Virus record (IMG/VR): IMGVR_UViG_3300027708_000012 | Location: 62,001-126,000 of that record | DNA: 64,000 nt | Strand: one strand, 5' to 3' | Part shown: positions 24,864 to 53,380 of the stretch, in pieces | Layout: each line of letters begins with the position of its first letter | How positions within the stretch are numbered: the first letter of the stretch is position 1 | Position numbers and translations under genes: made by a program | Notes under the pieces: model-generated | What the model was told of the DNA's origin: nothing | What the model saw: the letters and a program-made list of their open reading frames with translations, nothing else | The model's database searches: none

Positions 24864-26198
24864 TTAAGCGTTTTCGATCTTTACATAACCAGCTGAAGCA
24901 TTTGCTTGACCTTCAAAGAACTTCCAAGGTACAGCTCGGCCAGCGGCAAACAATGCGCCAGCTGATTTGCTTAAACGAACACATGCAAATGGATAAACAA
25001 CTGCTTTGCGAGCTGTTAATTTCTTAACAAGATATGAACCGCCGTCTGCATCAAATGCCCAGATGTTCATTTGTGTGCCTTCGGCACCAACAAAACTGCT
25101 GCCAGCAACACCGTCAACTTTTAATTTACCAATAACATATCCTGTATCGCTATTACCAGTGTCATTTGAATTGATACGATAACGATCTGTTGAAACTTGT
25201 TTAATAATATCAACTTCTTCCAAACCAGCTACCCAAGCATAAGCAATAATAGCGTTTTCTTGATTGGTTGCTGAGCCAACATTTCCGCTATCAGTTGTTA
25301 AAACCATAGTACCAGTAGCACGAGTTTCGCTGTTTCCACCAACTGCGGATGAAAATGTAACTGGTTCTATTCCAGTGTAACCAGAGCCTTTTTCACTTAC
25401 AGTAATTGTTTTAACACCGTAGTATACATCCAATGTGCATCCAGCTGCTGAACTTGCTGACAAATCTGCATGTGTCACTGTAGTTGCTGATGCACCACTA
25501 GTAACTGCTGTATAATCGCCTTGTTGTAACACTGTTACATCTTTAACACCCCAAGTAAAGTTACAAGTAAATCCTTGACCACCCAATGAGTTTACATGTG
25601 TTACTGTGCCTGTTGGTGGAGTAGTACCGTTGTAAGTGCCACGGTTTGTAAAAGTTACTCCAGTTACTGGACCAAGAGCACCGCCACCACTGATGGCTGC
25701 CACAGCTAGTACAACGCCATTGGCAAAGTTTAATGGATCTCCAACAGCATAACCGTTTGTTCCGTCATTGCCTGCAACAATACTCACTTGAGAAACTTCC
25801 AAATTGCCAACTGTGAATTTTGCTGGAGTTATATTTGTACCAACTAGTGTTAAAATATCACCAGTTAAGTAGTCTGCGCCAGGGCCAGTACCGTCAGTAT
25901 TTACTACACCGTGAACTGCTTGCACATGACTTACGGTGGCAACAGCTGCCACTCCGTTAGCGATAGTAGGTGGTGCTATTGAGATTGTGGGGATTCTTTC
26001 CAAGTATGCACCGCTGCCGTATGATGTATCAGCTACCGATGCGCCAAATGTAACTCCTGCAAAGCCTTCGCCGCCAATGTGGTCATCACCATCATTTATT
26101 TCAGTGTCAGTATTTGAAATACCGTGTTGTGTTGTTTGATAGCCGCCAGTGCCTATGTTGCGGTTACCAAAATATTTTTTATTTAAAGGACGTCCCAT
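24864..26198 (-). CDS. Virion structural protein (possible head-decoration or fibre protein)
   Basis: 444 aa, Gly/Thr/Val-rich, strong AAGGAG SD, its own late promoter and a structured leader; two genes downstream of the capsid gene. Confidence 0.55.
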   Translation of the reverse strand: MGRPLNKKYFGNRNIGTGGYQTTQHGISNTDTEINDGDDHIGGEGFAGVTFGASVADTSYGSGAYLERIPTISIAPPTIANGVAAVATVSHVQAVHGVVNTDGTGPGADYLTGDILTLVGTNITPAKFTVGNLEVSQVSIVAGNDGTNGYAVGDPLNFANGVVLAVAAISGGGALGPVTGVTFTNRGTYNGTTPPTGTVTHVNSLGGQGFTCNFTWGVKDVTVLQQGDYTAVTSGASATTVTHADLSASSAAGCTLDVYYGVKTITVSEKGSGYTGIEPVTFSSAVGGNSETRATGTMVLTTDSGNVGSATNQENAIIAYAWVAGLEEVDIIKQVSTDRYRINSNDTGNSDTGYVIGKLKVDGVAGSSFVGAEGTQMNIWAFDADGGSYLVKKLTARKAVVYPFACVRLSKSAGALFAAGRAVPWKFFEGQANASAGYVKIENA

Positions 26199-26220
26199 TT
26201 TATTTTCTCCTTAAGAAAAG

Positions 26221-26276
26221 TGGCGTTCTAGGCCATACGCGGTTGGATTTCCGCATAAAACTCACCCCATGTGAGT
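26221..26276 (-). promoter_or_regulatory. Three tandem hairpins in the 5' UTR
   Basis: ACTCAC/GTGAGT, TATGCGG/CCGCGTA and TGGC/GCCA stems lie between the promoter CATAAATA (26287-26294) and the SD. Confidence 0.5.
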
Positions 26277-32857: not shown

Positions 32858-35800
32858 TTAAAATGCTCTACCAGTTGATTTTGCCGCTGTCTTTGCTGTT
32901 TTGCTACTAGCATCGGCTGTAGTGGCACTGTGATTAATTAATTCTACCATATGTCTATTTAACATGATTAGCTGGTCGTTCAAATCTTTTAAGGTAGCCT
33001 CAGCTGTTTTTGCTTTGGGTGCTTCTTTAGGTGCTTCTTTAGGTGCTTCTTTAGTTGCCGCAGCTTTTGCTTGTTCTGATTCTCCAGGTTTACCTGTTGT
33101 TTTTGTTTCTTCTTTCTTAGCGGCCGCTTCGGTAGTTTTAGGAGCACTAGCAGTTGCAGCAGGTTTTGGTGCACCTGTTGTTTTTGTTTCTTCTTTCTTT
33201 GCGGCCGCTTCAGTAGTTTTAGGAGCACTAGCAGTTGCAGCAGGTTTTGGTGCACCTTCTGTTTTATTTTTTGCTGTGAGTTTGGCAAATTCTTCATCAC
33301 TTACTTTGTTAACAATTTTAGGATTAAACATATCGCCAAGCATGCCACCTTTGCCACCGATAATATCTCCAAAACTTCCAGTTAATTTGTTAGCTTGCTC
33401 GGTGACATATCCTACATCTCCTGATTTTTTTCCTTTAGTCAAATCTCCTACCTTACCTGCTATGTCTGCACTTTTAGGAATCATTCCACCAAGCATTTTA
33501 TTCATCTGTGATTTTGCAGATTCTGCTTGAGCAATAACTGCTTTAGCTTCTGGACTATTAGGATCTACAATTTTTCCGTTAATTTTTACGGTTGTATTTG
33601 CATTTTCAAGTGCGTCTGCCTGTGCTGTTTTTGTAACTTCTGATATTTTTGCAACTGTTTCTTCTTGCATACTTACTTGTTCGTTAGCTGCTTGTTGCTT
33701 TAATTCTTTTTCTCTTGTAGCACTATATTCGTTAAGATTCTCCATGACATCTTGCATTTCTCTTTTAGATGCCGCTTGCTTTTCAAACATTGCTTTATTA
33801 AGTGTTTCGTTTTCAATTGCAGCAAGTTCTTCGGTAGTTGCTTGACGATCACCAATTTCTGCTTTCATTTTAATAATTCGTTCACCGATCATCTGTGCTG
33901 TTTCAGCATCTTCTTTGGCTCCTTTTTCCATAGCTTTTGCATGGAACGATCTGTTTTCTTCACTGTATCCTTTATAGTCGTCAATTATTTTTTGCTGACT
34001 TTCTGTAAATTGTGAATGATATTGTTCTTGGGCTTTTCCTGCAACTGTTGCAGATTCTATACTTTTTAATCCCATATCTTCAGATACTTTTCGCGCAGCT
34101 TCCGATGCCGATATCTTAATTGTTGAAGATGCTTGCTCGTTGTCTGTTATTTTTTTCAAATTATTTGCGCTGTCATTGGAAAAACTTTGTATATTATCGT
34201 TCATATCTATATAAAAGTCATCCATACTTGCACTAATAGGCAATATTGCAGCTATAGCATCATCACTAAGACCTTTAACATTGTATCCTACAACGCTTCT
34301 TGCAAGCTCAGCGGCTTTAAATATTTCATCTTTCTTAGCTGCCTGATCAGCTAATTCAGCAGAAGTTTTTTTCTTAGTGTCTCCAAAGAAATTATCTTCA
34401 TCTTTTGTTTTTGATTTAAACGCTTCTAATTGTTTTGCATTTCCAGAAAATGATATTTTAGTTTGTTCTTCTACTACTTTTTTAGTTTCTTCAATTGCAG
34501 AAGCTTTTTTAGTAGTTTCCCAACTAATGCCAGCTTCAATTTGTTTTTGTAAAGGCTCCATTATAGCCTTATATTTGTCACCTATTGCTTTACCTTCGTC
34601 TCCAGTCCGCATTTCATAAGAAACTTTACTTCCACCTAACTTGCTACCGTCACCCATTTGAGCTTTTAATTTTTCTCTAAGAGCAGCTCGCTCAGCTTGC
34701 ATCTGTTCTCGAACAGCTGCCAATTCTTTTTCAGCAGCTTTGCTACTGTCATTTTGTACTTGTTTGGTTTCAGTTGAGCCGCCACCTGACATGCTACTAA
34801 TAGAAGTGGATACTGATTTGCTAATTTCAGAAAAATTTACTCCTCCTGGAGCTTTACTTCCAGCACTTAGTTGTTTGCCCATAGCTTTAGTAGCATCAGG
34901 ATTTAATACAGTTTCACCTTTGTGTATTTTGACAATAGCATCTTCAGGTTCTACAGCACTTCCAGTTTCTGCTAGTGTTCCGCCTGCACGTTTTTTAGTT
35001 GGCTCGTAGTCTTTAGGCAAACTACTAGCACCGCCTGTAGTTTTAGTAGGACCTTCTTTTCCTCCCGAAACTATTTCGTTTAAACCTTTAGCAATTTTTG
35101 AAGGAGCTTTTTCAGCTTGCTCCATTGTAGTAGCACCGCCAGAAACTTTCTTCATAGCTGCGTTCATAGCATCTATATAAGCAGGCGTGGTAGCTAATTT
35201 TTTGTTTACATCTTCAAAATTATGAGAAAGGCCTCCGGCTGCTATTGCAGCTGCTTTGTTCATTGCATTTAAATCTTGAGCAACTTTTTGTCCTTCGTCT
35301 GCTTCAGGCGTTGCTTTTGCTTTGCCGTTTTCATCTACTTTCAAACCAGCTTGAGTAGCTTGCACAGCTTCTCGTTGATCTTTAATTGCTTTTACATAGT
35401 CGCCGCCGTTTTTGTTTGCTTCACTTTGTACACTCATCATGGCTTTATTGCCCATGACAAGATTAGCCGCAGCTTGTTGTTGTTCTGCTGTTCCGCTCTT
35501 GACTAACCGTTTAAATTCTTCATCAGCCATACGACGTTGAACAGCCGCTTGTGCTTCATCCATTTGAGCTTGCGCTACTTTTTTCTGCTCGTCAGTTTTG
35601 GCATTCAACATAAGTTCAGTAGCTGCTTGATATTTGTTAGCTGCTTCTGGTCCCATCGCCTGCAACATGGCCAAACCTTCTTTAGTTTGCACTCCACCTG
35701 TGGCAATTTCTGTTGTCAGGCTCATAAATCCAGGGCCTAGTTTTTGCACTTGCTGTTGGACTTTTTCGTAATTTTCTCGTTGCTTTTCGTCCATTTGCAT

Positions 35801-36541
35801 CATGGCTAACTGTGCTAAAGGTTTTTTCTCTTCAGCTTTAATGCTGTCCATGATAGCTTGACGACTTTGGCCAGTAATTTTTGCCGTTTCATCTAAACTC
35901 ATTGCTAAATCAATAGCACTCTTGGCGATAGCAGCTTGTCCAGCTTTATCATTAGCATTTCTTTTGGCATCATTCATTGTAGCCATTGCTGTGATTTCAG
36001 CTTGCTCTTGCGCACTGATACCCATCTTGTTCAACTGATCACCAGTTTCTACAATTTGTTTCTGAACTTTACTAAAATTTAACGCACTTTGCTGTGCTGT
36101 GATACCTAATCCGCCAATACTTCCATCAGCTCGTTTGATTACTTCAGAGAATTGTTGCGTAGTTAGTCCTGCATCTCCTGCCATTCTAACAAACAATCCA
36201 ATATTATTGCCGCCAATGCCTAACTCGGCACTAGCTTTATCCATATTAGTTTTTTGTTGTAATAACGCACCGCCAAATAAATCTAAACCTTTACCCAGTG
36301 CATTCAATCCAACAGCTTGAGCACCTTTAGATAACGCTGCTAATCCAGCTGTGGCTGCATCAGTTCCGCTGTTTAATCTATTAAATCCAAAATATAAACT
36401 GGCCGCGCCATCGGATAGATCTTTTAAACCTTTGTTTGCGCCAGCAGCATTTAGACCAGCTTGTTGCGGTTGAGCTGCACTATTGCCCGAGCCTTGTGCT
36501 AACAGTTTTTGTGCGGTTTCTTCAGATAATGGTGTTGCCAT
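32858..36541 (-). CDS. Tape-measure-like / baseplate hub protein (gp29-like)
   Basis: 1227 aa, Ala/Gln/Lys-rich and helical-looking, with RAGGT...E...VKIHKGETVL, a motif common in tape measures. Adjacent to the gp26/gp51-like chaperones. Confidence 0.65.
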   Translation of the reverse strand: MATPLSEETAQKLLAQGSGNSAAQPQQAGLNAAGANKGLKDLSDGAASLYFGFNRLNSGTDAATAGLAALSKGAQAVGLNALGKGLDLFGGALLQQKTNMDKASAELGIGGNNIGLFVRMAGDAGLTTQQFSEVIKRADGSIGGLGITAQQSALNFSKVQKQIVETGDQLNKMGISAQEQAEITAMATMNDAKRNANDKAGQAAIAKSAIDLAMSLDETAKITGQSRQAIMDSIKAEEKKPLAQLAMMQMDEKQRENYEKVQQQVQKLGPGFMSLTTEIATGGVQTKEGLAMLQAMGPEAANKYQAATELMLNAKTDEQKKVAQAQMDEAQAAVQRRMADEEFKRLVKSGTAEQQQAAANLVMGNKAMMSVQSEANKNGGDYVKAIKDQREAVQATQAGLKVDENGKAKATPEADEGQKVAQDLNAMNKAAAIAAGGLSHNFEDVNKKLATTPAYIDAMNAAMKKVSGGATTMEQAEKAPSKIAKGLNEIVSGGKEGPTKTTGGASSLPKDYEPTKKRAGGTLAETGSAVEPEDAIVKIHKGETVLNPDATKAMGKQLSAGSKAPGGVNFSEISKSVSTSISSMSGGGSTETKQVQNDSSKAAEKELAAVREQMQAERAALREKLKAQMGDGSKLGGSKVSYEMRTGDEGKAIGDKYKAIMEPLQKQIEAGISWETTKKASAIEETKKVVEEQTKISFSGNAKQLEAFKSKTKDEDNFFGDTKKKTSAELADQAAKKDEIFKAAELARSVVGYNVKGLSDDAIAAILPISASMDDFYIDMNDNIQSFSNDSANNLKKITDNEQASSTIKISASEAARKVSEDMGLKSIESATVAGKAQEQYHSQFTESQQKIIDDYKGYSEENRSFHAKAMEKGAKEDAETAQMIGERIIKMKAEIGDRQATTEELAAIENETLNKAMFEKQAASKREMQDVMENLNEYSATREKELKQQAANEQVSMQEETVAKISEVTKTAQADALENANTTVKINGKIVDPNSPEAKAVIAQAESAKSQMNKMLGGMIPKSADIAGKVGDLTKGKKSGDVGYVTEQANKLTGSFGDIIGGKGGMLGDMFNPKIVNKVSDEEFAKLTAKNKTEGAPKPAATASAPKTTEAAAKKEETKTTGAPKPAATASAPKTTEAAAKKEETKTTGKPGESEQAKAAATKEAPKEAPKEAPKAKTAEATLKDLNDQLIMLNRHMVELINHSATTADASSKTAKTAAKSTGRAF
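33017..33257. repeat. In-frame tandem repeats: 2 x 81 bp (33092-33257) and 3 x 12 bp (33017-33053)
   Basis: They encode GAPKPAATASAPKTTEAAAKKEETKTT twice and KEAP three times; the DNA copies are near-identical. Confidence 0.9.
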
Positions 36542-37424: not shown

Positions 37425-37651
37425 GCCTAATCGGACTTAGTGGTCAAGAAATCCACGAAAGTTTGGTTAGGCTTGAAAAAGAAACAAAGATTTTTAAAGA
37501 AGATTTGTTTAGAATCTCGTGGTACATGCGTGGCGGAGTTACTGTAAACGATCTAATGGAGCGATACGGTTTCGAAGATCGTCAGATCATGTACGAGATT
37601 ATTAAAGAAAACATCGAAGCAACTAAAGCTAGCCAAATGCCTTTGCTTTAA
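37412..37651 (+). CDS. gp51-like baseplate hub assembly chaperone domain (probably expressed as a gp26 frameshift extension)
   Basis: LFRISWYMRGGVT..DLM...EDR.IM.EIIKEN resembles short gp51-like proteins. The only start upstream of this core is a TTG at 37463 without an SD. Confidence 0.6.
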   Translation, partial: FFRLSLIGLSGQEIHESLVRLEKETKIFKEDLFRISWYMRGGVTVNDLMERYGFEDRQIMYEIIKENIEATKASQMPLL

Positions 37652-38853
37652 TCTGGCTTCCATCCTGGCGGTTTCAATGCTCGCTTGACAGGATTAGTAG
37701 GATCTTGTATCATATTTTGATTATCGGGATCCACTACCCAGCCAGTTATATCCTGATTGTTACTGTGCCAGTTGTCATTGTAGTACATCTTACGGCCAGC
37801 AGCTGTTTTTCCAGTAGTTGGGTTAACAGGATTAGCTGATGTCCCAGGATCACTAGATGCTGCTATATCTTTTTGAGGATCAGTCTCACCGGTTGTTCCA
37901 GTTGGTGCTGCGGCTTTGTTGTATTCGCTATTAGGATTGTCAGCATTAGGAATTGAAGGACGTATTGCCTTTGGTACGTATTGTAATCCGTTATTAATAG
38001 TTTCGCCGATTGTTTGAGCCAGTTCAGGAATGTTATCTGCTATTAATGCCGCAATATAGTTTGCATTATCTTTGTTGTTAATCCAAGATTTAATAGCAAC
38101 GGCACCGCCTAACAATACTGTATTAAATCCAGGAATGTGTTTTGTTATTGTTCTTAAAAATGGGCCACCTGTTAGTGCATAAAAAGCTGTTGTGCCAGCA
38201 AGTACTGTTGCCCAACGAGCCAACATAATAGTGGCTTCTTGATTCAATACTGCATTGTATTCGTCTTCAGTCCATGCACCTGTATCTAGTTTAGTTTTTT
38301 TGTAACCATCCATCTTGCTTACAAAATCTAAATAAGGCTGTATCAATTCCTTAATATTCCAACCCCACAATGCAGCCTTTACAGATTTAGTAATTACGCC
38401 CCAAGCTGAAATCTTTTCCAAACCAAGACCTAAGCTACCAATTTTCATTTGAGCAGTAGCTGTTGCTTTTTTAATAACAGCCGCATCTAATTGTTCTGCT
38501 TCCATGCCCAGACTATCAATAGCTTGTGCTCTAAGAGTTGTTTGATTAGGAACTGCTTTGCCAGCTTCTTTATACTCTCTTTCCAAATTCATCATTTCTC
38601 TACTGACTTTGGCATTATTTCTACGCAAATACTCAGTAGCAGCATCTGCGGCTTTCATGTTTTTGTTTTGGGCAAGTACAGCTATTTCATCAGCAATTTT
38701 ATCTTCTAAAGCACCTGCAGCACCCCTAAGAGTCTTGATAGGACTTGAAATAAATTGTTTTCCTTTAGCCAAGGTACTGCCTAATTTCTCAATTCCTTGA
38801 GATATTGCACCTTCATGAACTTTCTTTTCAACAATTATTTCGTAGACTTTCAT
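37648..38853 (-). CDS. Hypothetical late protein, possibly an internal head or ejected protein
   Basis: 401 aa with its own late promoter GATAAATA (38873-38880), an N-terminal MKVYEIIVE...E, and hydrophobic segments. Confidence 0.55.
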   Translation of the reverse strand: MKVYEIIVEKKVHEGAISQGIEKLGSTLAKGKQFISSPIKTLRGAAGALEDKIADEIAVLAQNKNMKAADAATEYLRRNNAKVSREMMNLEREYKEAGKAVPNQTTLRAQAIDSLGMEAEQLDAAVIKKATATAQMKIGSLGLGLEKISAWGVITKSVKAALWGWNIKELIQPYLDFVSKMDGYKKTKLDTGAWTEDEYNAVLNQEATIMLARWATVLAGTTAFYALTGGPFLRTITKHIPGFNTVLLGGAVAIKSWINNKDNANYIAALIADNIPELAQTIGETINNGLQYVPKAIRPSIPNADNPNSEYNKAAAPTGTTGETDPQKDIAASSDPGTSANPVNPTTGKTAAGRKMYYNDNWHSNNQDITGWVVDPDNQNMIQDPTNPVKRALKPPGWKPD

Positions 38854-38884
38854 TACTTTAATCCCTATAAGATATTTATCATAC

Positions 38885-39327
38885 TGTAAAGATGAACTAC
38901 GTTCATCTGTTCTTCGCTTTCGCTCGAACTTTTTGTTTCTTTTTTAATTATTATCAAGTGCGAAGCACTGTTAATATTATCTAGATTGTTCAGTCACACT
39001 TTGCCCAGGCAGGGCAAAGAATAAAATAACATTATCTGAGTTGCACAATGTCACACTAGCGTTACTGCATTACTGTGGCGGTTGTCCGGTACCACGAGCA
39101 GAGTCTTTATCACAACGGCGGCTTACAAATATACGCTAACATATTTGTAAACGTGGGTTTTTCACCCTCCTTTTGCCTTTTTTACTATTTTTAAACAACC
39201 AAACAGCGGCATTTTGCTATCATCGTCCTGTTAAGGATAGTGGTTGAGTACTCACAACGGCGAGAGATTTCCGTCCCTGCGACCCGAGGTCCAGGTATAG
39301 AGCGCACGAAATTAGCCTGCGCCAGCT
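38885..39327. ncRNA. Large structured non-coding element (ncRNA or hairpin-rich DNA origin-like locus)
   Basis: Longest intergenic region in the window, with no ORF of 60 aa or more, at least 7 hairpins and two pairs of internal direct repeats. Confidence 0.45.
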
Positions 39328-39765
39328 TTAACCGTTTAATTGTTTGCCTTTAATGTGGGAACCGTGTACCCGAACCTGTATGTGCCCGTTATAATAGTCG
39401 TCAGATTCTAAAACTCTACGACTAAATTGCTCTCTTGCCTCTATGTAACTGCATTCTGATTTGGATTTACAGTAATAAAGTATTTCTCTACGGAAGTTTT
39501 CGGTACCTAACTGCGTAACATCTTTGCTAAGTTCAGGGCTAGAACCATAATATTCTTGCCAGTCGCTATCAATTTTGCTACGGATTTTCTTTTTTTTCTT
39601 TGTGCCGTTCTTTAACTTTAAAGTTTTGTAGGTCGTTTTACTAAATTTTGCTAATTTTTTGCCTATGTACATACGCCCGGTAATTGTATTTGTTATATTA
39701 TAAACAAACCCAACACAATCTTCGGGCAATTCTGTGATTAATTGATTTTCGTAGTACCAAGACAT
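39328..39765 (-). CDS. GIY-YIG endonuclease (stand-alone catalytic domain, DenA/Seg-like)
   Basis: GFVYNITN...GRMYIGKK, YYGSS, F.REIL, E, and YYN motifs; 145 aa. Confidence 0.85.
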   Translation of the reverse strand: MSWYYENQLITELPEDCVGFVYNITNTITGRMYIGKKLAKFSKTTYKTLKLKNGTKKKKKIRSKIDSDWQEYYGSSPELSKDVTQLGTENFRREILYYCKSKSECSYIEAREQFSRRVLESDDYYNGHIQVRVHGSHIKGKQLNG

Positions 39766-39768
39766 ACA

Positions 39769-40047
39769 CTAGTTAGTGTTATCTGGATCCTCCGACTGTG
39801 CCTTTTGATTTTCTTTCTTTGCTGCCTTGTCTTTGTCCAGCCACATTCTATATTGTTGAACATGCCCTCTACGTTCTTTTGCTATAATTCTAATCTGTGC
39901 CAACCAGTAGCGCATGTTTTCGCCTGCTCGTCTTGAGCCTCTTGATTGCCAATTTTGATTTGCCTTGAAATATTCTCTAAAAGCCAGCATGAGTCTTTCA
40001 TGAGATTCCTCATTTTGTTCTGGACTCGGCTCTACATGCTTAGACAT
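39769..40047 (-). CDS. Small basic protein, Hc1/histone-H1-like
   Basis: F..YFKAN.NW..RG.RRAG..MR..LA.I...AKERR..VQ resembles the Hc1-like family. Confidence 0.5.
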   Translation of the reverse strand: MSKHVEPSPEQNEESHERLMLAFREYFKANQNWQSRGSRRAGENMRYWLAQIRIIAKERRGHVQQYRMWLDKDKAAKKENQKAQSEDPDNTN

Positions 40048-40276
40048 TTGGACCTTTTATCTTCTCCAACAGTTGATAATGTTCATATTTTTTAACATAT
40101 TCTGATTCTTGGTCATAAGTTGCACACTGATTTAAGGCCTGTTCACACGCCCATTTTAACAAATACAAGTCTTTTTTACAATCCCATTGACTATTTGTAT
40201 TGCGTCTAGGACTGTTTACTTCAGTTTTTATACGTTTTATAAGCTCAATGGCTTGACCAGTGGACCATTCCTTCAC
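40040..40276 (-). CDS. Hypothetical protein
   Basis: 78 aa; overlaps both neighbours (GTGA at the gp46 stop), suggesting translational coupling. Confidence 0.55.
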   Translation of the reverse strand: MKEWSTGQAIELIKRIKTEVNSPRRNTNSQWDCKKDLYLLKWACEQALNQCATYDQESEYVKKYEHYQLLEKIKGPNV

Positions 40277-42054
40277 TCATTGACCTCTAAATCATTTGCA
40301 TAACTGGTGTAACCGTTTTCTTTAATAACTTTTAGCACATTGTTTACACGACCAATTAGTTCATCCTTGTGACTGATTAAGAAAATATTCTTTTTACGTT
40401 CACGCGACATCTTTTTAAGTACAGCTAATGCGCCTTCAACGCCTGATGCATCAAGTCCGTTGTCAATAAGCTCATCGACAAACAGTAAATTAATCTGCTG
40501 ATACAAACTTTCCCATACATCTCTAAACGACCAAGACAGGCCTAGAATCAAACGATTACGTTCGCCACGCGACAAGTTGTCAAAGTCTAAGTCTTGCCCA
40601 AGCTGTGTAATTTCCACAGTTAAATCGTTTTTAAATACAACAGTATGCGGTAAGCCCATCTTGTCTAGATAGTAAGTAAGACGATTGTTTAAGTAGGCTA
40701 GATTTTGATCTATAATCTTCTTGCGAATAAAGCTGTCTTTACTTGTAAGTAGTTTAAGCAAGAACTCTTGATGTTCTTTTAATGTATTAAGTGTGTTTAC
40801 ATTATCCCAAGATATTTCTTGCATAGCGGTATTGGTCAATTCATCAATTTGATCTTGATAAGGATCGCTTTCGCCAGCTTTAATTTGTAATTGTGTTTCA
40901 AGTGTCTTGAGATTGTTCTGATGTTTAAGTGCTTGCTCTATTGTATCGTAATAAGTTTCTGGGCGACTAGCAACTTCGCCTGTACCGGCAATCTCAGTTG
41001 TAATTTTAGTAAGATCCTTACCGACTTTATCAAAATACATGACAGCTTCATCAGCATTAGCCTGTGCTTGCTTGCTCATTTCTTCATGCTTATGGTCATG
41101 TAGTTCTTGTTCACAAGCGTGACACTTTTTATCCTGCAACTTAGCAAGCTCGTCAGCGTATTTTTTTACGCTTCGCTCCGCTTGCGCTATCGCGCTTTCG
41201 AGTGTTGCCCTCTCTTTGTTTAGACTCTTTAATTTTCTGTTTCGTTCTTCGTAATCTTTTAACTCGGCATGTTTAATTAATTCGCTATCAATGTCTACAT
41301 TCTCAAGTTCGACAATAGCACGGCCTATTTTTTCTAGTTCTTGTGTATGCTGATTATTCCAAGCACTTTGTCTAGTTAAAATACCATCAATACTTTTTTG
41401 AATATTTTCATTAGATCGTTTAATTGCTTCTATATTTGCAGATTCTTGTATGATTGTATCTTTAGTCTGACGAATTTGTTCTTTAAGAGCTTCTGCTTTT
41501 TCACTCAGTAGAGTAATGCCAAGTAATTGTTCAATAATAACTCGTTGATCATTAGCCCGCATACTAAGAAACGGTTCTGTATAAGTGTTTAATGCCACAA
41601 TATGTTTAAACATATCGTGACTCATACCTAGCAAATCATCTAGATCTTTTTGCGTTTCACGCATGTCGCCTTGTGCGTCATCTGTTTCTTCTGTTTCTTG
41701 TGCTAGATTATTAACAAAGAATTGCAATACATTTGGCTTGCGTCCTCGCTCAATACGATAATCAATGCCGTCTTTTTCAAATGCTAGTGTAACTAACATG
41801 TTCTTATTGTTAATCTTATTAATAAGATTATCTTTTTTAATGTTAGTTAACGCATTACCAAACAATGCATAGCTAAGGGCATTTACAATAGTTGTTTTGC
41901 CCGTTCCATTGCGCGAACCGCTGTCATCTCCGCCTTGATCTAGATTTTCACCTAGGACAAGAGTTAAATTTTCTTGTGCAAAATTTACAGCCTGGGTTTG
42001 ATTGCCCACGCTCATAAAATTTTTAACTGTTAATTCTTTAATTTTAATTGTCAT
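40273..42054 (-). CDS. gp46: Recombination endonuclease ATPase subunit (gp46; Rad50/SbcC-like)
   Basis: Walker A GTGKTT, zinc hook CHAC, signature LSRGE, Walker B LLFVDE, ISH. Confidence 0.93.
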   Translation of the reverse strand: MTIKIKELTVKNFMSVGNQTQAVNFAQENLTLVLGENLDQGGDDSGSRNGTGKTTIVNALSYALFGNALTNIKKDNLINKINNKNMLVTLAFEKDGIDYRIERGRKPNVLQFFVNNLAQETEETDDAQGDMRETQKDLDDLLGMSHDMFKHIVALNTYTEPFLSMRANDQRVIIEQLLGITLLSEKAEALKEQIRQTKDTIIQESANIEAIKRSNENIQKSIDGILTRQSAWNNQHTQELEKIGRAIVELENVDIDSELIKHAELKDYEERNRKLKSLNKERATLESAIAQAERSVKKYADELAKLQDKKCHACEQELHDHKHEEMSKQAQANADEAVMYFDKVGKDLTKITTEIAGTGEVASRPETYYDTIEQALKHQNNLKTLETQLQIKAGESDPYQDQIDELTNTAMQEISWDNVNTLNTLKEHQEFLLKLLTSKDSFIRKKIIDQNLAYLNNRLTYYLDKMGLPHTVVFKNDLTVEITQLGQDLDFDNLSRGERNRLILGLSWSFRDVWESLYQQINLLFVDELIDNGLDASGVEGALAVLKKMSRERKKNIFLISHKDELIGRVNNVLKVIKENGYTSYANDLEVNE

Positions 42055-43064
42055 AGGCTATTATAAATGGCTAATAATGTATTTTTATCAAATTGATCTG
42101 AATCAATACTTATAATTTGGTTGCTAACAATTTGATCTACACTTTCAAATGCTTGTATATCAATGTTTGTATTGATTTCTGTTTCTTTCTTTTCTGCAAT
42201 AAGTGTAAGTTCGCGGATGTCGTAATCAGCCATGAACTTTTCTTTAATAAAACTTGCTTCTTCGTAAGTAATATCAATGTCTAGTGTAACACGTAGATGT
42301 TGCTTGGGTTTAATAACTGTGTCTGCTTCATCGATCAGCTGACTTAGTTTAATAGTTCTAAATGTAGGTTGAGCTGGCCAGCTGTGATATTCAGGTTGCC
42401 CGCCCCATTCTAAAATCATCATGCCACGTTCATCGTCCCATGCATCCGCATAGTTGTGGGGAAAGGCATTGCCAATATAAACCATGTTCTTTTGTTGCTG
42501 ACGTTTGTGAAAGTGTCCACTAAATCCTAATTCATAGTTTTTAAAACTGCTAAGTTGAATTTCTCCGTGATCTGGCATTTGAATCATTGCATTCATAAAG
42601 AAACTGGGTAATTCAAAGTGACCAAAGATATACTTGCCACCTTTTTTGCCTACAGCTTTCCATTCTTCTCCAACCAACCACGGACAAAGGGTAACATCTC
42701 CAATAGTAGTAGGCTCGTGTACGACAGTGACGCCAGGAATATATTTTCCAAACTCCACAGAGTGTATGTCCCGTTTGTCCTTATAATACAAATCATGATT
42801 ACCAGGAAAGAAAAAGAACTGATCAAACGCCTGCCCCAACTTTTCCAGGGCCCTAAGGCTATAATCCATTGTAGTAATGTTAAGGCTATTGCGGTTATGA
42901 TGCCAATCGCCCATAAAGATACCTGTATCACAACCTTCCTCCTTTGCTTTAGCAATATACCAATCTACAAAATCTTCACAGTCTTGGTTATGTGTGTTAC
43001 TATTAGACTTTAATCCAAAGTGTATATCTGTAAAACAAGCAACTTTTTTAAATAAATTTGTCAT
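42051..43064 (-). CDS. gp47: Recombination endonuclease nuclease subunit (gp47; Mre11/SbcD-like)
   Basis: Metallophosphoesterase motifs DIHFG, GDWHH, GNHD, GHFE, SGHFH. Confidence 0.93.
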   Translation of the reverse strand: MTNLFKKVACFTDIHFGLKSNSNTHNQDCEDFVDWYIAKAKEEGCDTGIFMGDWHHNRNSLNITTMDYSLRALEKLGQAFDQFFFFPGNHDLYYKDKRDIHSVEFGKYIPGVTVVHEPTTIGDVTLCPWLVGEEWKAVGKKGGKYIFGHFELPSFFMNAMIQMPDHGEIQLSSFKNYELGFSGHFHKRQQQKNMVYIGNAFPHNYADAWDDERGMMILEWGGQPEYHSWPAQPTFRTIKLSQLIDEADTVIKPKQHLRVTLDIDITYEEASFIKEKFMADYDIRELTLIAEKKETEINTNIDIQAFESVDQIVSNQIISIDSDQFDKNTLLAIYNSL

Positions 43065-52800: not shown

Positions 52801-53380
52801 ATTTAGACAATGGGTAACTAACGGAACAACAGGAGTCAAACCGTTGCCTCCTAGTAGTAGTGAGTTAAACAGTATACTAAGTTCTAATTTAAATTTAATT
52901 AAATCTATAAGTGACGAAATAATATATCATCCAGTAAATTATACATTATTATTTGGATCAAATGCTGATATATCCTTGCAAGCAAATTTTAATGCTATGA
53001 TAAATTCAAATAGTGCTGTATCGAATTCAGACGTACAGGCACGAATATTAAAAGCAATTAATACATTCTTTGCATTAGATAACTGGGATTTTGGAGACAC
53101 ATTTTATTTTACGGAGTTGAGTACATATGTAATGAATCAACTAGCACCTGACTTAATTTCATTTGTAATAGTTCCAGTGCAACCTAATCATTTCTTCGGA
53201 GCATTATTTGAAATACAGTGCTCTACTGATAGTATATTTTTAAGTTGTGCTACAACAGATAATATTATTATTGTAAACGGATTAACTAGCAGCAATTTAA
53301 AAACCATTGGCGCATCACCAACAAATAGTCTTACGACCAACCAAACAGTGACTAGCAATTCAATCGGAGGAACTATTTAA
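49889..53380 (+). CDS. gp6: Baseplate wedge protein (gp6-like)
   Basis: DFENLR..MIDY, FNDYIESSE, ENFLELAERRDSILRL...IGY, FSDGIFG.LP, QDRMVTGEDY; follows gp25. Confidence 0.85.
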   Translation: MSSTDRQNNLLIAENWQKIYQSFKNADFQSYDFENLRRTMIDYIRTNFPEDFNDYIESSEYLALIDLIAFVGQSIAFRVDLNARENFLELAERRDSILRLSRMIGYNASRNQAATGLLKFNTVSTTEAIIDSNGRNLAGQTIQWNDPSNVNWYDQFIKIINAALPQNHQFGTPIDSAKIYGIPTAQYRFNASNNNVPIYNFTKTVSGRSMNFEVTSTTFKGKTYIYEEAPKVGNSIAFIYRDDGFGATSPTTGFFFNFTQGTLNNGSFSVTHPVSNQTVDIATQNINNTDIWVYSIDQNTGLETELWTQVPSTTGNNVIYNSLNSKIKNIYSVVTRAGDAITLNFSDGIFGNLPLGQFRIYYRVSNALHYSINPADIVNISVAIPYISTKNKVETLTISLSLPTSVSNSTTAETNASIKTNAPQTYYMQDRMVTGEDYNIGPLSANLSVAKVKAINRTSSGISRYFDLTDPTGKYSKTNLFADDGVLYQEIYISDINFSYVTQTDIQGVIYNTVYDLLNTPDLRNFYYANYLDFLNVSLNIQWNAVTSDSNSSTGYISLINNTPGIFLSPLKVGTYASTDLKYLTVGSLIKFVAPTGFYFDTANNNVLISGTANVLNSSTYVWAEVVNVVDNGTAGGKGILPTNAGPITLNKSIPTTAIATQVIPQFTVTISPTVVTGMIDKIFANLNFGLRYDATTQSWQLISAANLNTVDQFSLGNQGNTDNLQLDSSWLLLFTTDTEKYTITTRNLRYIFESDKDVTFYFDTNAVVYDTVSSTTVLDTIKVLGVNTKPDSTNPFTLDLTWEVTSAYTGKDGYIDPKKIILTFANSSGSNVVDNPQLFLDIVDPSVNPLRKYVVEQRYSISSGQEDYKYVLNDPYNGPVRIFNSRSDPRLGSLQQYADGSYFYFVDSATVFKLTASTGKLSPTLDYKVYVGRDRLKFQYVHSADYDSRIDPGNSNIMDIYILTTSYDTLFRQWVTNGTTGVKPLPPSSSELNSILSSNLNLIKSISDEIIYHPVNYTLLFGSNADISLQANFNAMINSNSAVSNSDVQARILKAINTFFALDNWDFGDTFYFTELSTYVMNQLAPDLISFVIVPVQPNHFFGALFEIQCSTDSIFLSCATTDNIIIVNGLTSSNLKTIGASPTNSLTTNQTVTSNSIGGTI

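What the first reader, a model, noticed from the sequence alone, without database searches (positions are those of the whole stretch)
38885..39327. ~450-nt structured, internally repeated non-coding element directly downstream of a stand-alone GIY-YIG nuclease
Seen: the largest ORF-free gap in a tightly packed genome begins right at the GIY-YIG stop and is partly more GC-rich than other gaps. Hairpins (+ strand): AGATGAAC-TAC-GTTCATCT (38890-38908), GTTC..GC-TTTC-GC..GAAC (38909-38929), AGTGC-GAA-GCACT (38957-38969), CTTTGCCC-AGGCA-GGGCAAAG (38999-39019), TTACAAATAT-N8-ATATTTGTAA (39123-39150), GGGT..ACCC and TCCT..AGGA. Internal direct repeats: TCACAACGGCG at 39110-39120 and 39252-39262, and TAA(T/C)ATTATCT...TTG...GTCACACT at 38972-39000 and 39027-39057, which flank the GC-rich hairpin. 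I could not match it to tRNA, tmRNA, RNase P or group I/II introns. Inference: a large ncRNA co-transcribed on the - strand with gp55-47-46-Hc1-GIY-YIG. It could be a partner or guide RNA for the nuclease, which has no obvious C-terminal DNA-binding domain, by analogy with nuclease-associated RNAs such as HEARO/omegaRNA. That would be an undescribed system, but it is speculative.
Basis: partly seen in the sequence, partly recalled or inferred. Interest (0 to 1): 0.75.

Follow-up and report, generated by a model that had tools for sequence, protein, structure and literature searches.

The report
Large structured RNA beside phage nuclease
The gap encodes a roughly 440-nt, heavily folded non-coding RNA, a long form of the function-unknown Rfam family Polynucleobacter-1, which hundreds of freshwater T4-like phages keep directly behind a small DNA-cutting enzyme gene; its job is unknown, but two variable loops that are almost always identical to each other make it a candidate recognition RNA.

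Summary
Window 39327 to about 38888 (minus strand) is a conserved, structured RNA of about 440 nt. Its first 135 nt match Rfam RF01718 (Polynucleobacter-1, 113 bits, threshold 37), an RNA motif of unknown function described in 2010. The rest is equally conserved in more than 100 viral contigs. I support about 14 helices and three pseudoknots by compensatory changes.

The RNA starts right at the stop codon of a 145-aa GIY-YIG nuclease that has only a catalytic domain. Of 120 viral contigs that carry the RNA, 114 have this nuclease upstream. Of 77 contigs found through the nuclease, all 77 have the RNA. In two contigs a PD-(D/E)XK nuclease sits there instead.

The 2010 paper had already noted the upstream gene family (PSSM2_218-like). 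I show that this family is the GIY-YIG nuclease.

Two new points stand out. Rare bacterial copies lack the nuclease; they sit beside DUF6641 and often a tyrosine recombinase with only a catalytic domain.

A guide role is untested. No target was found, and the transcript evidence is thin.

The parts
38888..39327 (-). Full-length conserved structured RNA (about 440 nt), an extended Polynucleobacter-1 RNA
   Evidence: Conservation across 91 and 78 homologues runs from 39327 to about 38895 and then collapses. An HMM of the whole region finds it in 77 of 77 nuclease-sampled contigs. 62 of 98 curated base pairs have at least 3 sequences with double compensatory changes.
39193..39327 (-). 5' domain, the Rfam RF01718 match (helices PK0, P1, P2, P3, P4, P5)
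   Evidence: cmscan gives 113.4 bits (gathering threshold 37), E = 1.7e-25, model positions 1-141 of 141.
39314..39327 (-). Pseudoknot PK0: 39327-39325 (AGC) pairs with 39316-39314 (GCU) inside the P1 loop. It starts on the base after the GIY-YIG stop codon.
   Evidence: 0.91 canonical pairs against 0.07-0.46 for slid controls; compensatory changes in 17 and 12 sequences. Bacterial copies use GAG/CUC.
39122..39152 (-). Hairpin P7. Its loop (UAGCGU, 39138-39133) forms pseudoknot PK1 with ACGCUA at 39062-39057.
   Evidence: All 12 pairs of P7 covary. PK1 is 0.95 canonical against 0.19-0.37 for slid controls, and all 6 pairs show compensatory changes.
39064..39116 (-). Most conserved core: helices P8 and P9, plus pseudoknot PK2 (GUUGU 39116-39112 pairs with ACAAC 39085-39081 in the P9 loop)
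   Evidence: Block identity is 0.86. PK2 is 0.98 canonical with 19, 15 and 5 compensatory sequences; P8 and P9 are 0.91 and 0.98 canonical.
39030..39056 (-). Repeat module 1: GUGUGAC, then a variable stretch, then ACUC, then variable heptamer r1 (AGAUAAU, 39037-39031)
38999..39019 (-). G+C-rich hairpin P10 between the two modules
   Evidence: 0.87 canonical pairs; one pair has 24 compensatory sequences.
38975..38999 (-). Repeat module 2: GUGUGAC, then a variable stretch, then AUCU, then variable heptamer r2 (AGAUAAU, 38982-38976), identical to r1
   Evidence: Corrected mutual information between corresponding columns of the two modules is 0.42-0.96. r1 equals r2 in 74 of 77 sequences, against 10 expected.
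38909..38929 (-). 3' module: stem GUUC/GAAC enclosing GA[GC-GAAA-GC]GAAG (tandem G-A-like internal loop and a GNRA-type loop)
   Evidence: The pattern recurs by eye in the alignment. The inner 2-bp stem P12 is 0.88 canonical with a few compensatory changes (GC, GU/AC, AC/GU). The outer stem P11 scored only 0.40 in the MAFFT columns, so it is not supported by my count.
38888..38908 (-). Terminal hairpin P13 (AGAUGAAC-GUA-GUUCAUCU) followed by UUUAC; probable 3' end or weak intrinsic terminator
   Evidence: This is the best-covarying helix: 0.96 canonical, with 7 of 8 pairs compensatory. Conservation stops just after it. The consensus terminator scan did not call it.
39328..39765 (-). 145-aa GIY-YIG nuclease with a catalytic domain only (SegE-type domain; PHROG 447, mislabelled 'NAD synthetase' in public records)
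   Evidence: Pfam PF19835, E = 6e-33. PHROG 447. 39% identical to PSSM2_218. The GIY, YIG, Glu and Asn positions align with I-TevI and are conserved in the clade. It is more conserved than gp46 in 45 of 54 loci.

Best explanation
What is shown. The gap is a gene for a roughly 440-nt compactly folded non-coding RNA. It is the full-length form of the Rfam family Polynucleobacter-1 (RF01718), whose function is unknown. It has about 14 helices and three pseudoknots and ends in a conserved hairpin. It lies on the minus strand as the last element of the gp47-gp46-(small ORFs)-GIY-YIG transcription unit of a large clade of uncultivated freshwater T4-like phages.

What is inferred. The RNA is made as the tail of the nuclease mRNA and may then be trimmed. 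It works as the RNA subunit of a ribonucleoprotein with a small DNA-acting enzyme that has no nucleic-acid-binding domain of its own. That enzyme is the GIY-YIG nuclease here, a PD-(D/E)XK nuclease in a few relatives, and possibly the catalytic-domain-only tyrosine recombinase and/or DUF6641 in bacterial copies.

In this model the conserved scaffold holds the protein. The two variable heptamers, r1 and r2, are the specificity elements. They are read by one and the same partner. That partner could be the two arms or strands of a symmetric nucleic-acid site, or the two subunits of a homodimer.
For: Identity and structure:
- RF01718 match at 113 bits.
- Conservation over the whole gap.
- 62 of 98 curated pairs have compensatory changes, slid controls are far lower, and three pseudoknots are supported.
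- z = -3.0 for the single-sequence fold.

Linkage to the nuclease:
- The nuclease lies directly upstream on the same strand in 114 of 120 RNA-bearing viral contigs. About 106 of these have its end within about 200 nt of the RNA (stop-to-RNA gaps are mostly 3-30 nt in the nuclease-sampled set); 8 carry an inserted gene.
- The genes on either side vary between contigs.
- 77 of 77 contigs sampled through the nuclease carry the RNA.
- The RNA's first pseudoknot strand begins on the base after the stop codon.
- A non-homologous nuclease (PF24608) takes the same slot in L062 and L100.
- The nuclease is more conserved than gp46 in 45 of 54 loci and keeps its catalytic residues, so it is not a decaying selfish gene.
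- It has no DNA-binding domain; the 145 aa are essentially the catalytic domain.

Twin heptamers:
- r1 equals r2 in 74 of 77 phage sequences, across 12-13 states and about 25 parsimony changes each. Shuffling gives 10 of 77, with a maximum of 22.
- The same rule holds, with different sequences, in most bacterial copies.

Bacterial context: the RNA again neighbours a catalytic-domain-only DNA enzyme, a roughly 190-aa tyrosine recombinase, in 7 of 14 loci.

Transcription: lake metatranscriptome contigs match exactly inside the RNA and across the nuclease/RNA junction.
Against: - There is no direct evidence of RNA-protein contact or of any guided activity.
- No complement to r1/r2 was found within 2.5 kb on either side in 77 loci. 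No extended complement, enrichment or depletion was found in the 345-kb genome.
- r1 and r2 are not predicted to be especially unpaired.
- Adjacency is interrupted by inserted genes in about 8 of 120 loci.
- Bacterial members of the RNA family have no GIY-YIG gene nearby; their constant neighbour is DUF6641.
- Five cultured-phage homologues of the nuclease (38-48% identical) have no RF01718 downstream, so the protein family can work without this RNA.
- In L100 the nuclease type changed but the RNA and its heptamers did not.
- Transcript evidence is low-depth and unstranded, and DNA carry-over is not excluded.
Confidence: 0.4

Rival explanations
1. The RNA is an autonomous structured RNA gene whose function has nothing to do with the nuclease. 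Under this view the neighbouring GIY-YIG and PD-(D/E)XK genes are domesticated or selfish Seg-like free-standing homing endonucleases. They settled next to a highly conserved RNA gene, as T4 seg and mob genes sit next to conserved genes. Alternatively, the pairing is simply conserved gene order.
For: - Different nuclease families occupy the same slot, as happens at homing-endonuclease hot spots.
- Other genes can be inserted between the nuclease and the RNA.
- L100 changed nuclease type without any change in the RNA.
- Bacterial copies have no nuclease.
- The nuclease family exists without the RNA in cultured phages.
- The protein hits homing-endonuclease profiles.
Against: - The nuclease is nearly universal in the clade (114 of 120; 77 of 77) and is more conserved than gp46. 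That is unlike sporadic, fast-decaying homing endonucleases.
- It lacks the C-terminal DNA-binding domain that Seg and I-TevI enzymes need to find their sites.
- The zero-nucleotide spacing between stop codon and RNA is kept across a clade whose flanking genes vary.
Confidence: 0.27
2. The RNA is a cis-acting 3'-UTR element of the nuclease operon. It could protect the mRNA from 3' exonucleases, or it could control or neutralise a potentially toxic nuclease, in the manner of an RNA antitoxin in type III toxin-antitoxin systems.
For: - It lies immediately after the stop codon, at the end of the transcription unit, and in many relatives faces a convergent baseplate gene.
- It has two repeat modules.
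- A ribosome terminating at the stop codon would overlap PK0 and P1, which allows coupling between translation and RNA folding.
Against: - About 440 nt with three pseudoknots is far more than stabilisers or known 3' regulators need.
- In bacteria the RNA is a separate, divergently oriented unit with about 200 nt of its own upstream region, not a 3' UTR.
- In type III systems the RNA consists of tandem repeats processed by an endoribonuclease toxin, which is not the case here.
Confidence: 0.13
3. The phage RNA is a mimic or decoy of a host-encoded accessory system, the bacterial DUF6641 + RNA (+ recombinase) module. It would be carried to neutralise or hijack that system, as some phages carry pseudo-ToxI RNA.
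For: - Homologous full-length RNAs occur in freshwater Burkholderiales (Limnohabitans, Polynucleobacter), which are plausible hosts, next to DUF6641.
- Their distribution is sporadic: 2-3 of 151 genomes in the family.
- An AlphaFold DB relative of DUF6641 is fused to a SpoVT/AbrB domain.
Against: - The RNA is near-universal in hundreds of phage contigs, while the bacterial module is rare.
- Phage heptamers differ from all bacterial ones.
- No DUF6641 gene was found in the phage genome.
- The host of this phage is unknown.
Confidence: 0.08
4. The region is a DNA-level element, such as a replication origin, a packaging site, or a pair of direct-repeat recombination sites (r1 and r2 as crossover cores), rather than an RNA.
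For: - r1 and r2 are identical direct repeats 56 bp apart. A 6-8-bp identical core is what tyrosine recombinases require, and a recombinase neighbours the bacterial copies.
Against: - Dozens of compensatory changes and strand-specific G-U pairs, including three pseudoknots, show selection on RNA structure.
- No recombinase lies next to the phage copies.
- The 56-bp segment between r1 and r2 is present in almost all homologues; one contig, L105, has a larger internal deletion.
Confidence: 0.04

Closest known systems
Polynucleobacter-1 RNA motif (Rfam RF01718; Weinberg et al. 2010, PMC2864571)
   Same: The window element is a member: 113 bits over the full model. The original supplement already says the motif lies mostly downstream of GOS11034 / PSSM2_218-like genes and suspected a phage origin. 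The flanks of its alignment show the same downstream conserved blocks.
   Different: - The Rfam model covers only the first roughly 135 nt. I show the conserved, covarying RNA is about 440 nt with three pseudoknots and twin identical heptamers.
- The upstream gene is now identified as a GIY-YIG nuclease.
- The family is placed in T4-like phage contigs. The 2010 paper found none in sequenced phages, and I found none in 50,697 phage records by blastn.
- The function remains unknown.
HEARO / omega RNA of IscB (OMEGA systems)
   Different: - No Rfam HEARO hit, even at E <= 10.
- The enzyme is GIY-YIG, not HNH/RuvC.
- The RNA lies downstream of the gene.
- No transposon ends or terminal guide were identified.
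- There are two internal identical 7-nt elements rather than one longer terminal guide.
IS110 / IS1111 bridge (seek) RNAs
   Same: A structured RNA in the non-coding part of a mobile-element-like locus beside a small DNA recombinase, with two internal modules that carry short programmable segments sharing identical core bases. In bacterial copies the RNA lies upstream of, and on the same strand as, a recombinase gene.
   Different: - The recombinase here belongs to the tyrosine family (PF00589), not the DEDD/RuvC-like family.
- The two segments are wholly identical, rather than separate target and donor guides.
- No matching DNA sites were found.
- The phage copies neighbour nucleases, not recombinases.
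- My literature search turned up no RNA-guided tyrosine recombinase.
Free-standing GIY-YIG homing endonucleases of T-even phages (Seg proteins, I-TevI)
   Same: The neighbouring protein has a SegE-type GIY-YIG catalytic domain with the catalytic residues conserved. A different nuclease family can occupy the same slot.
   Different: It has no DNA-binding C-terminal domain (145 aa). It is near-universal and more conserved than gp46. It is not related to T4 endonuclease II, DenA.
Large phage-associated structured RNAs of unknown function (GOLLD, ROOL)
   Same: Large, intricately folded RNAs with unknown function that are frequent in phage genomes.
   Different: No sequence or structure match to these families. 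This RNA is smaller, and it is tied to a nuclease gene rather than to tRNA clusters; the window has no tRNA genes.

Membership tests
Rfam RF01718 Polynucleobacter-1 RNA | Covariance-model score at or above the curated gathering threshold, over the full model | tested here: met
   113.4 bits against 37; model positions 1-141 of 141; E = 1.7e-25.
Rfam RF01718 Polynucleobacter-1 RNA | The model's helices are kept by compensatory changes in relatives | tested here: met
   P1, P2b, P3, P4 and P5 are 0.89-0.99 canonical with compensatory changes in 77 sequences.
Rfam RF01718 Polynucleobacter-1 RNA | Located downstream of a GOS11034 / PSSM2_218-like gene, as the describing paper states for most members | tested here: met
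   The upstream ORF is 39% identical to PSSM2_218, E = 4e-20.
HEARO / omega RNA (IscB-associated) | Match to the HEARO covariance model | tested here: not met
   No hit in 38500-39900 at E <= 10.
HEARO / omega RNA (IscB-associated) | Adjacent IscB-type (RuvC + HNH) nuclease | tested here: not met
   The neighbour is a GIY-YIG domain protein (PF19835).
Group I intron carrying a GIY-YIG homing endonuclease | Group I catalytic core (Rfam Intron_gpI) and an interrupted host gene | tested here: not met
   No Intron_gpI hit at E <= 10. The ORF upstream of the nuclease ends 3 nt before it, leaving no room for a 5' intron half, and no split gene flanks the element.
IS110-type bridge RNA system | DEDD/RuvC-like IS110 recombinase encoded next to the RNA | tested here: not met
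   The phage neighbours are nucleases. The bacterial neighbour is a tyrosine recombinase, PF00589.
IS110-type bridge RNA system | Loop segments complementary to target and donor DNA at the element ends | tested here: inconclusive
   The twin variable heptamers exist, but no complementary sites were found in the flanks or the genome. Element ends are not defined.
Type III toxin-antitoxin (ToxIN-like) | Tandem array of short RNA repeats followed by an endoribonuclease toxin gene | tested here: not met
   There are two non-tandem modules inside a large scaffold, the gene order is reversed, and the protein is a GIY-YIG DNA-nuclease-type domain.
Free-standing Seg-like homing endonuclease (for the neighbouring gene) | GIY-YIG catalytic domain with conserved catalytic residues | tested here: met
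   PF19835, E = 6e-33. The GIY, YIG, Glu and Asn positions align with I-TevI.
Free-standing Seg-like homing endonuclease (for the neighbouring gene) | C-terminal DNA-binding domain, and sporadic presence or absence among close relatives | tested here: not met
   The protein is 145 aa with the catalytic domain spanning residues 3-129. It is present in 114 of 120 RNA-bearing contigs, and it is more conserved than gp46.
Rho-independent terminator (3' end of the RNA) | G+C-rich hairpin followed by a U tract | tested here: inconclusive
   A conserved 8-bp hairpin is followed by UUUAC. The consensus scan did not call it, because it has few G-C pairs and a short U run. No 3'-end mapping is available.

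The most novel reading that the evidence does not exclude
The extended Polynucleobacter-1 RNA could be the RNA subunit of an undescribed, modular RNA-directed DNA-targeting system. A conserved pseudoknotted scaffold would recruit enzymes that have only a catalytic domain: GIY-YIG or PD-(D/E)XK nucleases in T4-like phages, and a roughly 190-aa tyrosine recombinase (with DUF6641) in Burkholderiales elements. The twin identical heptamers would base-pair with the two arms or strands of a symmetric DNA site. That would explain why they change together.
Probability: 0.1. Interest if true: 0.95.

Novelty: new member of a known kind. Interest (0 to 1): 0.66.

Why it matters
RF01718 has had no known function since 2010 and was catalogued as a 141-nt motif of uncertain origin. 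This window, with its relatives, shows five things:
- The RNA is about three times longer than the catalogued motif.
- It is intricately pseudoknotted.
- It is carried by a very large clade of uncultivated freshwater T4-like phages.
- It is locked to a small nuclease gene that is under strong purifying selection.
- It contains two short hypervariable segments that have changed many times but almost always together and identically.

That last pattern is what one expects of a specificity element read by a single partner. It is rare among known RNAs. It gives an immediately testable handle: mutate r1, r2 or both.

The bacterial relatives sit next to a tyrosine recombinase that lacks its DNA-binding half. 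This extends the question to whether RNAs can supply target recognition to enzyme families not yet known to be RNA-directed.

Even if the answer is mundane, three products remain useful: a corrected family model, the correction of the 'NAD synthetase' label to a GIY-YIG nuclease, and the phage assignment.

Tried and rejected
- **tRNA or tmRNA.** None in the window.
- **Other Rfam families** (group I/II introns, ribozymes, HEARO, GOLLD, ROOL and others). Nothing at E <= 10 except chance-level hits.
- **Similar DNA in 50,697 phage records.** No match.
- **RF01718 downstream of nuclease homologues in five cultured phages** (Melnitz, C48C1, ACP17, phiN3, S-SRM01). None found.
- **The nuclease as the T4 DenA (endonuclease II) orthologue.** Rejected: different PHROG and no significant similarity.
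- **Antiparallel pairing between r1 and r2.** Rejected, because the G-to-A and G-to-C changes at the second position would break it.
- **Pairing between the variable stretches N1 and N2 of the two modules.** Only marginally above shuffled partners: 3.86 against 3.61 +/- 0.10.
- **A complement to r in cis.** No exact 8-mer at any consistent position within 2.5 kb on either side.
- **A complement, enrichment or depletion of r in the 345-kb genome.** None.
- **A complement of r at consistent positions in bacterial loci.** None.
- **A small ORF starting at the AUG inside r1.** An AUG is always present in the phage lineages, but the ORFs end in three different frames and the peptides are not conserved, so the region is not coding.
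- **Predicted accessibility of r1 and r2.** Not distinctive.
- **Fold of DUF6641.** The model is confident (pLDDT 86), but there is no PDB match and only uncharacterised AlphaFold DB relatives.
- **Direct or inverted repeats that would mark element ends in three bacterial loci.** Only short palindromic hairpins with no match to r.
- **Promoter and terminator consensus scan.** No convincing promoter between the nuclease gene and the RNA, and the terminal hairpin was not called.
- **Metatranscriptomes.** Only a few low-depth, unstranded contigs, so no RNA ends or strand could be read.
- **My first regex attempt to extract the modules** failed and was replaced by column-based extraction.
Full report
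**Setting**

The window is part of a 345-kb IMG/VR virus record (GC 0.38) with T4-like genes. On the minus strand the order is:
- gp47 (Mre11-like; 42051-43064)
- gp46 (Rad50-like; 40273-42054)
- two small ORFs of 78 and 92 aa with no family match
- a 145-aa GIY-YIG protein (39328-39765; Pfam SegE_GIY-YIG, E = 6e-33)
- a 474-nt ORF-free gap (38854-39327)
- a 401-aa ORF with no family match

A T4-type baseplate gene follows on the other strand. The gap is the largest ORF-free stretch of the window.

**What the gap is**

Rfam places RF01718, the Polynucleobacter-1 RNA, at 39327-39193 on the minus strand. The score is 113.4 bits against a gathering threshold of 37, over the full model. It is the only copy in the genome.

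This motif was reported by Weinberg et al. 2010 (PMC2864571). They found it in freshwater and estuary metagenomes and in one Polynucleobacter genome. Their supplement states three things: the 3' half is not always detected, most copies lie downstream of GOS11034 genes that may be related to PSSM2_218 of cyanophage P-SSM2, and no copy was found in a sequenced phage. In the library I could search, no later paper mentions the motif.

PSSM2_218 is a 145-aa protein annotated 'NAD synthetase'. It is 39% identical to the window's GIY-YIG protein (E = 4e-20). So the gene association recorded in 2010 is an association with this nuclease family.

**The RNA is much longer than the Rfam model**

I scanned IMG/VR with a pattern from the motif core.

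In alignments of 91 and 78 non-redundant homologues, conservation runs from 39327 to about 38895 and then collapses. The best-conserved blocks lie outside the Rfam model, at 39099-39060 and 38999-38980.

A covariation scan and a curated structure give helices P1-P14 (about 14 with covariation support) plus three pseudoknots:
- PK0: 39327-39325 with 39316-39314
- PK1: the P7 loop, 39138-39133, with 39062-39057
- PK2: 39116-39112 with the P9 loop, 39085-39081

The supported helices are 0.87-0.99 canonical, against 0.1-0.6 when the partner strand is slid by one or two columns. Of 98 curated pairs, 62 have at least three sequences with changes on both sides. The window sequence alone folds with z = -3.0.

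The RNA ends in the best-covarying hairpin (38908-38890), followed by UUUAC. This is probably the 3' end or a weak terminator, although the consensus scan did not call it.

**Linkage to the nuclease**

Of the 120 RNA-bearing contigs, 114 have a homologue of the nuclease upstream on the same strand. Most are 70-88% identical at the amino-acid level; two are 55%. In about 106 of them the gene ends within about 200 nt of the RNA. In 8 of them one or two extra genes are inserted between the two. Two other contigs are cut at the contig end, and four have no GIY-YIG gene.

In two of those four (L062, L100), the gene in that slot is a 172-aa PD-(D/E)XK nuclease, Pfam PF24608.

I also sampled the other way, starting from the protein. 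At least 598 viral contigs encode relatives. Of the best 80, all 77 with enough downstream sequence carry the RNA on the same strand, mostly 3-30 nt after the stop codon.

The surrounding genes vary. The small ORFs between gp46 and the nuclease differ. The 401-aa ORF is present in only a few relatives. In many, the convergent baseplate gene ends about 600 nt after the motif, so the RNA closes the transcription unit.

The nuclease is more conserved than gp46 in 45 of 54 loci (mean 77.5% against 67.6%). It keeps the GIY, YIG, Glu and Asn positions that align with the catalytic residues of I-TevI.

It is not the T4 DenA orthologue. It belongs to PHROG 447, which is widespread in T4-like cyanophages (458 phage records). 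The five cultured-phage loci I checked have no RF01718. The coupling is therefore a property of this freshwater clade, not of the whole protein family.

**The twin heptamers**

Each module has an invariant GUGUGAC, a variable stretch, ACUC or AUCU, and then a 7-nt segment. In the window both segments read AGAUAAU (r1 at 39037-39031, r2 at 38982-38976).

Across the family this segment varies. Observed forms include AGAUAAU, GGAUAAU, GGAUGAA, AGAUGAG, GGAUGAU, GCAUAAU and GAAUGAU. The two copies nevertheless carry the same bases:
- Corrected mutual information between corresponding columns is 0.42-0.96.
- r1 equals r2 at all four variable positions in 74 of 77 sequences, against 10 expected (maximum 22 in 2000 shuffles).
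- About 25 parsimony changes are inferred for each copy on a tree built from the rest of the RNA.

The rule also holds in most bacterial copies, with other sequences such as AUCGAAAG, AGCGAAAG and AUCAAAAG.

This is covariation by identity, not by complementarity. I tested the following explanations, and none accounts for it:
- r1-r2 pairing
- a complement in cis
- a complement or count bias in the phage genome
- a conserved small ORF

Gene conversion is unlikely, because the stretches next to the heptamers differ between the two modules. The simplest reading is that one partner reads both segments.

**Bacterial relatives**

A scan of one genome per species gave 39 pattern hits, of which about 26 are true matches. 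They lie mostly in freshwater Burkholderiales, including the isolates Limnohabitans sp. Bal53 (two copies) and Polynucleobacter rarus.

None has a GIY-YIG or gp46 gene nearby. Instead:
- The RNA sits in a non-coding stretch of about 1 kb.
- It is divergent from a DUF6641 gene in 23 of 24 loci with room to judge.
- In 7 of 14 loci it is followed, on the same strand, by a roughly 190-aa tyrosine recombinase that consists of the catalytic domain only (it aligns to XerD residues 102-283).

The module is rare, found in 2-3 of 151 genomes of the family, so it is accessory. A confident model of DUF6641 has no match among solved structures. The phage genome has no DUF6641 gene.

**Transcription**

Five lake metatranscriptome runs hold parts of the region. 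I laid four of them on the stretch. Exact-match contigs cover 39136-39286 inside the RNA, 39297-39447 across the nuclease/RNA junction, and parts of both flanking genes.

Depth is low, the contigs carry no strand information, and DNA carry-over cannot be excluded. The strand assignment rests on the covariance model and on strand-specific pairs.

**Interpretation**

Shown:
- It is a structured RNA gene of a known family whose function is unknown.
- The RNA is far larger than the catalogued motif.
- In phages it is tightly coupled to a conserved small nuclease gene.
- It carries twin specificity-like segments.

Inferred (confidence about 0.4): it acts as the RNA subunit of a complex with a DNA enzyme that lacks its own binding domain, and the heptamers are recognition elements.

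The main rival (about 0.27) is an autonomous RNA whose nuclease neighbours are homing-endonuclease-like settlers or simply conserved gene order. Weaker rivals are a cis-acting 3'-UTR or antitoxin-like element, a decoy of the bacterial module, and a DNA-level site.

I put the full RNA-directed targeting reading at about 0.1.

**Verdict**

The feature is real, and its RNA family is already catalogued, so formally it is a new member of a known kind. The function is unknown. The newly seen architecture, the identity covariation and the changing set of catalytic-domain-only enzymes beside it make it a good experimental target.

Noticed in passing
window 26196-26276 (-): A second Rfam hit: freshwater-2 RNA (RF02980, 72.8 bits, gathering threshold 49.9). 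It lies directly upstream of an ORF start with a GGAG ribosome-binding site, so it is a likely 5'-UTR cis-regulatory element.
   Followed up: partly
window 37648-38853 (-): The 401-aa ORF right after the RNA has no Pfam or PHROG match. It is present (29-51% identical) in only 4 of about 120 related contigs (L045, L073, L102, L125). The space between the RNA and the convergent baseplate gene therefore holds variable cargo.
   Followed up: partly
window 53380-58569 (+), 58882-63999 (+), 32858-36541 (-): Three very large ORFs: 1729 aa, at least 1706 aa (running off the window end), and 1227 aa (no Pfam match). I did not examine them.
   Followed up: no
L062:1666-2184(-), L100:13755-14273(-): In two related viral contigs a 172-aa PD-(D/E)XK nuclease (PF24608; PHROG 244, labelled 'RusA-like') replaces the GIY-YIG gene directly upstream of the RNA.
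   Followed up: yes
L011, L025, L034, L037, L041, L044, L104, L084: Extra genes are inserted between the GIY-YIG gene and the RNA. They are ORFs of 228-334 aa with no family match, and in L084 a B12-binding radical-SAM protein plus a 151-aa ORF.
   Followed up: partly
L129, L150, L152, L165, L176, L178, L184, L193, L205: A subgroup of contigs keeps the RNA from about model position 85 onward. It has a different stretch of about 100-125 nt in place of the first two hairpins, which looks like a variant 5' domain.
   Followed up: no
L021, L040, L048, L051, L078, L099, L100, L108 (alignment A1, columns about 330-390): Some homologues carry an extra hairpin of 20-60 nt inserted in the P8/P9 region. 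This marks a tolerated expansion site.
   Followed up: no
L219, L210, L242, L209, L220, L221, L245 (bacterial contigs): The bacterial module has a conserved layout: DUF6641 (divergent), then RF01718 RNA in a non-coding region of about 1 kb, then a roughly 190-aa catalytic-domain-only tyrosine recombinase. In L219 and L210, short palindromic hairpins (for example AAGCGTC...ACGCTT) recur at the cassette borders.
   Followed up: partly
L213 (Limnohabitans sp. Bal53, first copy): One of the two copies in this isolate matches the family only for the first roughly 225 nt and then diverges completely. The RNA gene is truncated or interrupted.
   Followed up: no
Public phage records (e.g. NC_006883 PSSM2_218, NC_041997 gp020, NC_028945 gp219): The GIY-YIG family (PHROG 447) is widely annotated as 'NAD synthetase', which appears to be a propagated misannotation.
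   Followed up: partly
Only the GCCG part recurs in other lineages, and the P3 loop does not covary with the PK2 partner. The repeat is specific to this lineage.
   Followed up: yes
window 39031-39037 (r1) and homologues: In all phage lineages except the divergent subgroup (L057, L062, L082), r1 contains an AUG. Only the combinations AU, GA, GG and GU occur at its two variable positions. The corresponding URA in r2 reads as a stop codon. The short ORFs between them are not conserved in frame, so the meaning of this, if any, is unknown.
   Followed up: partly
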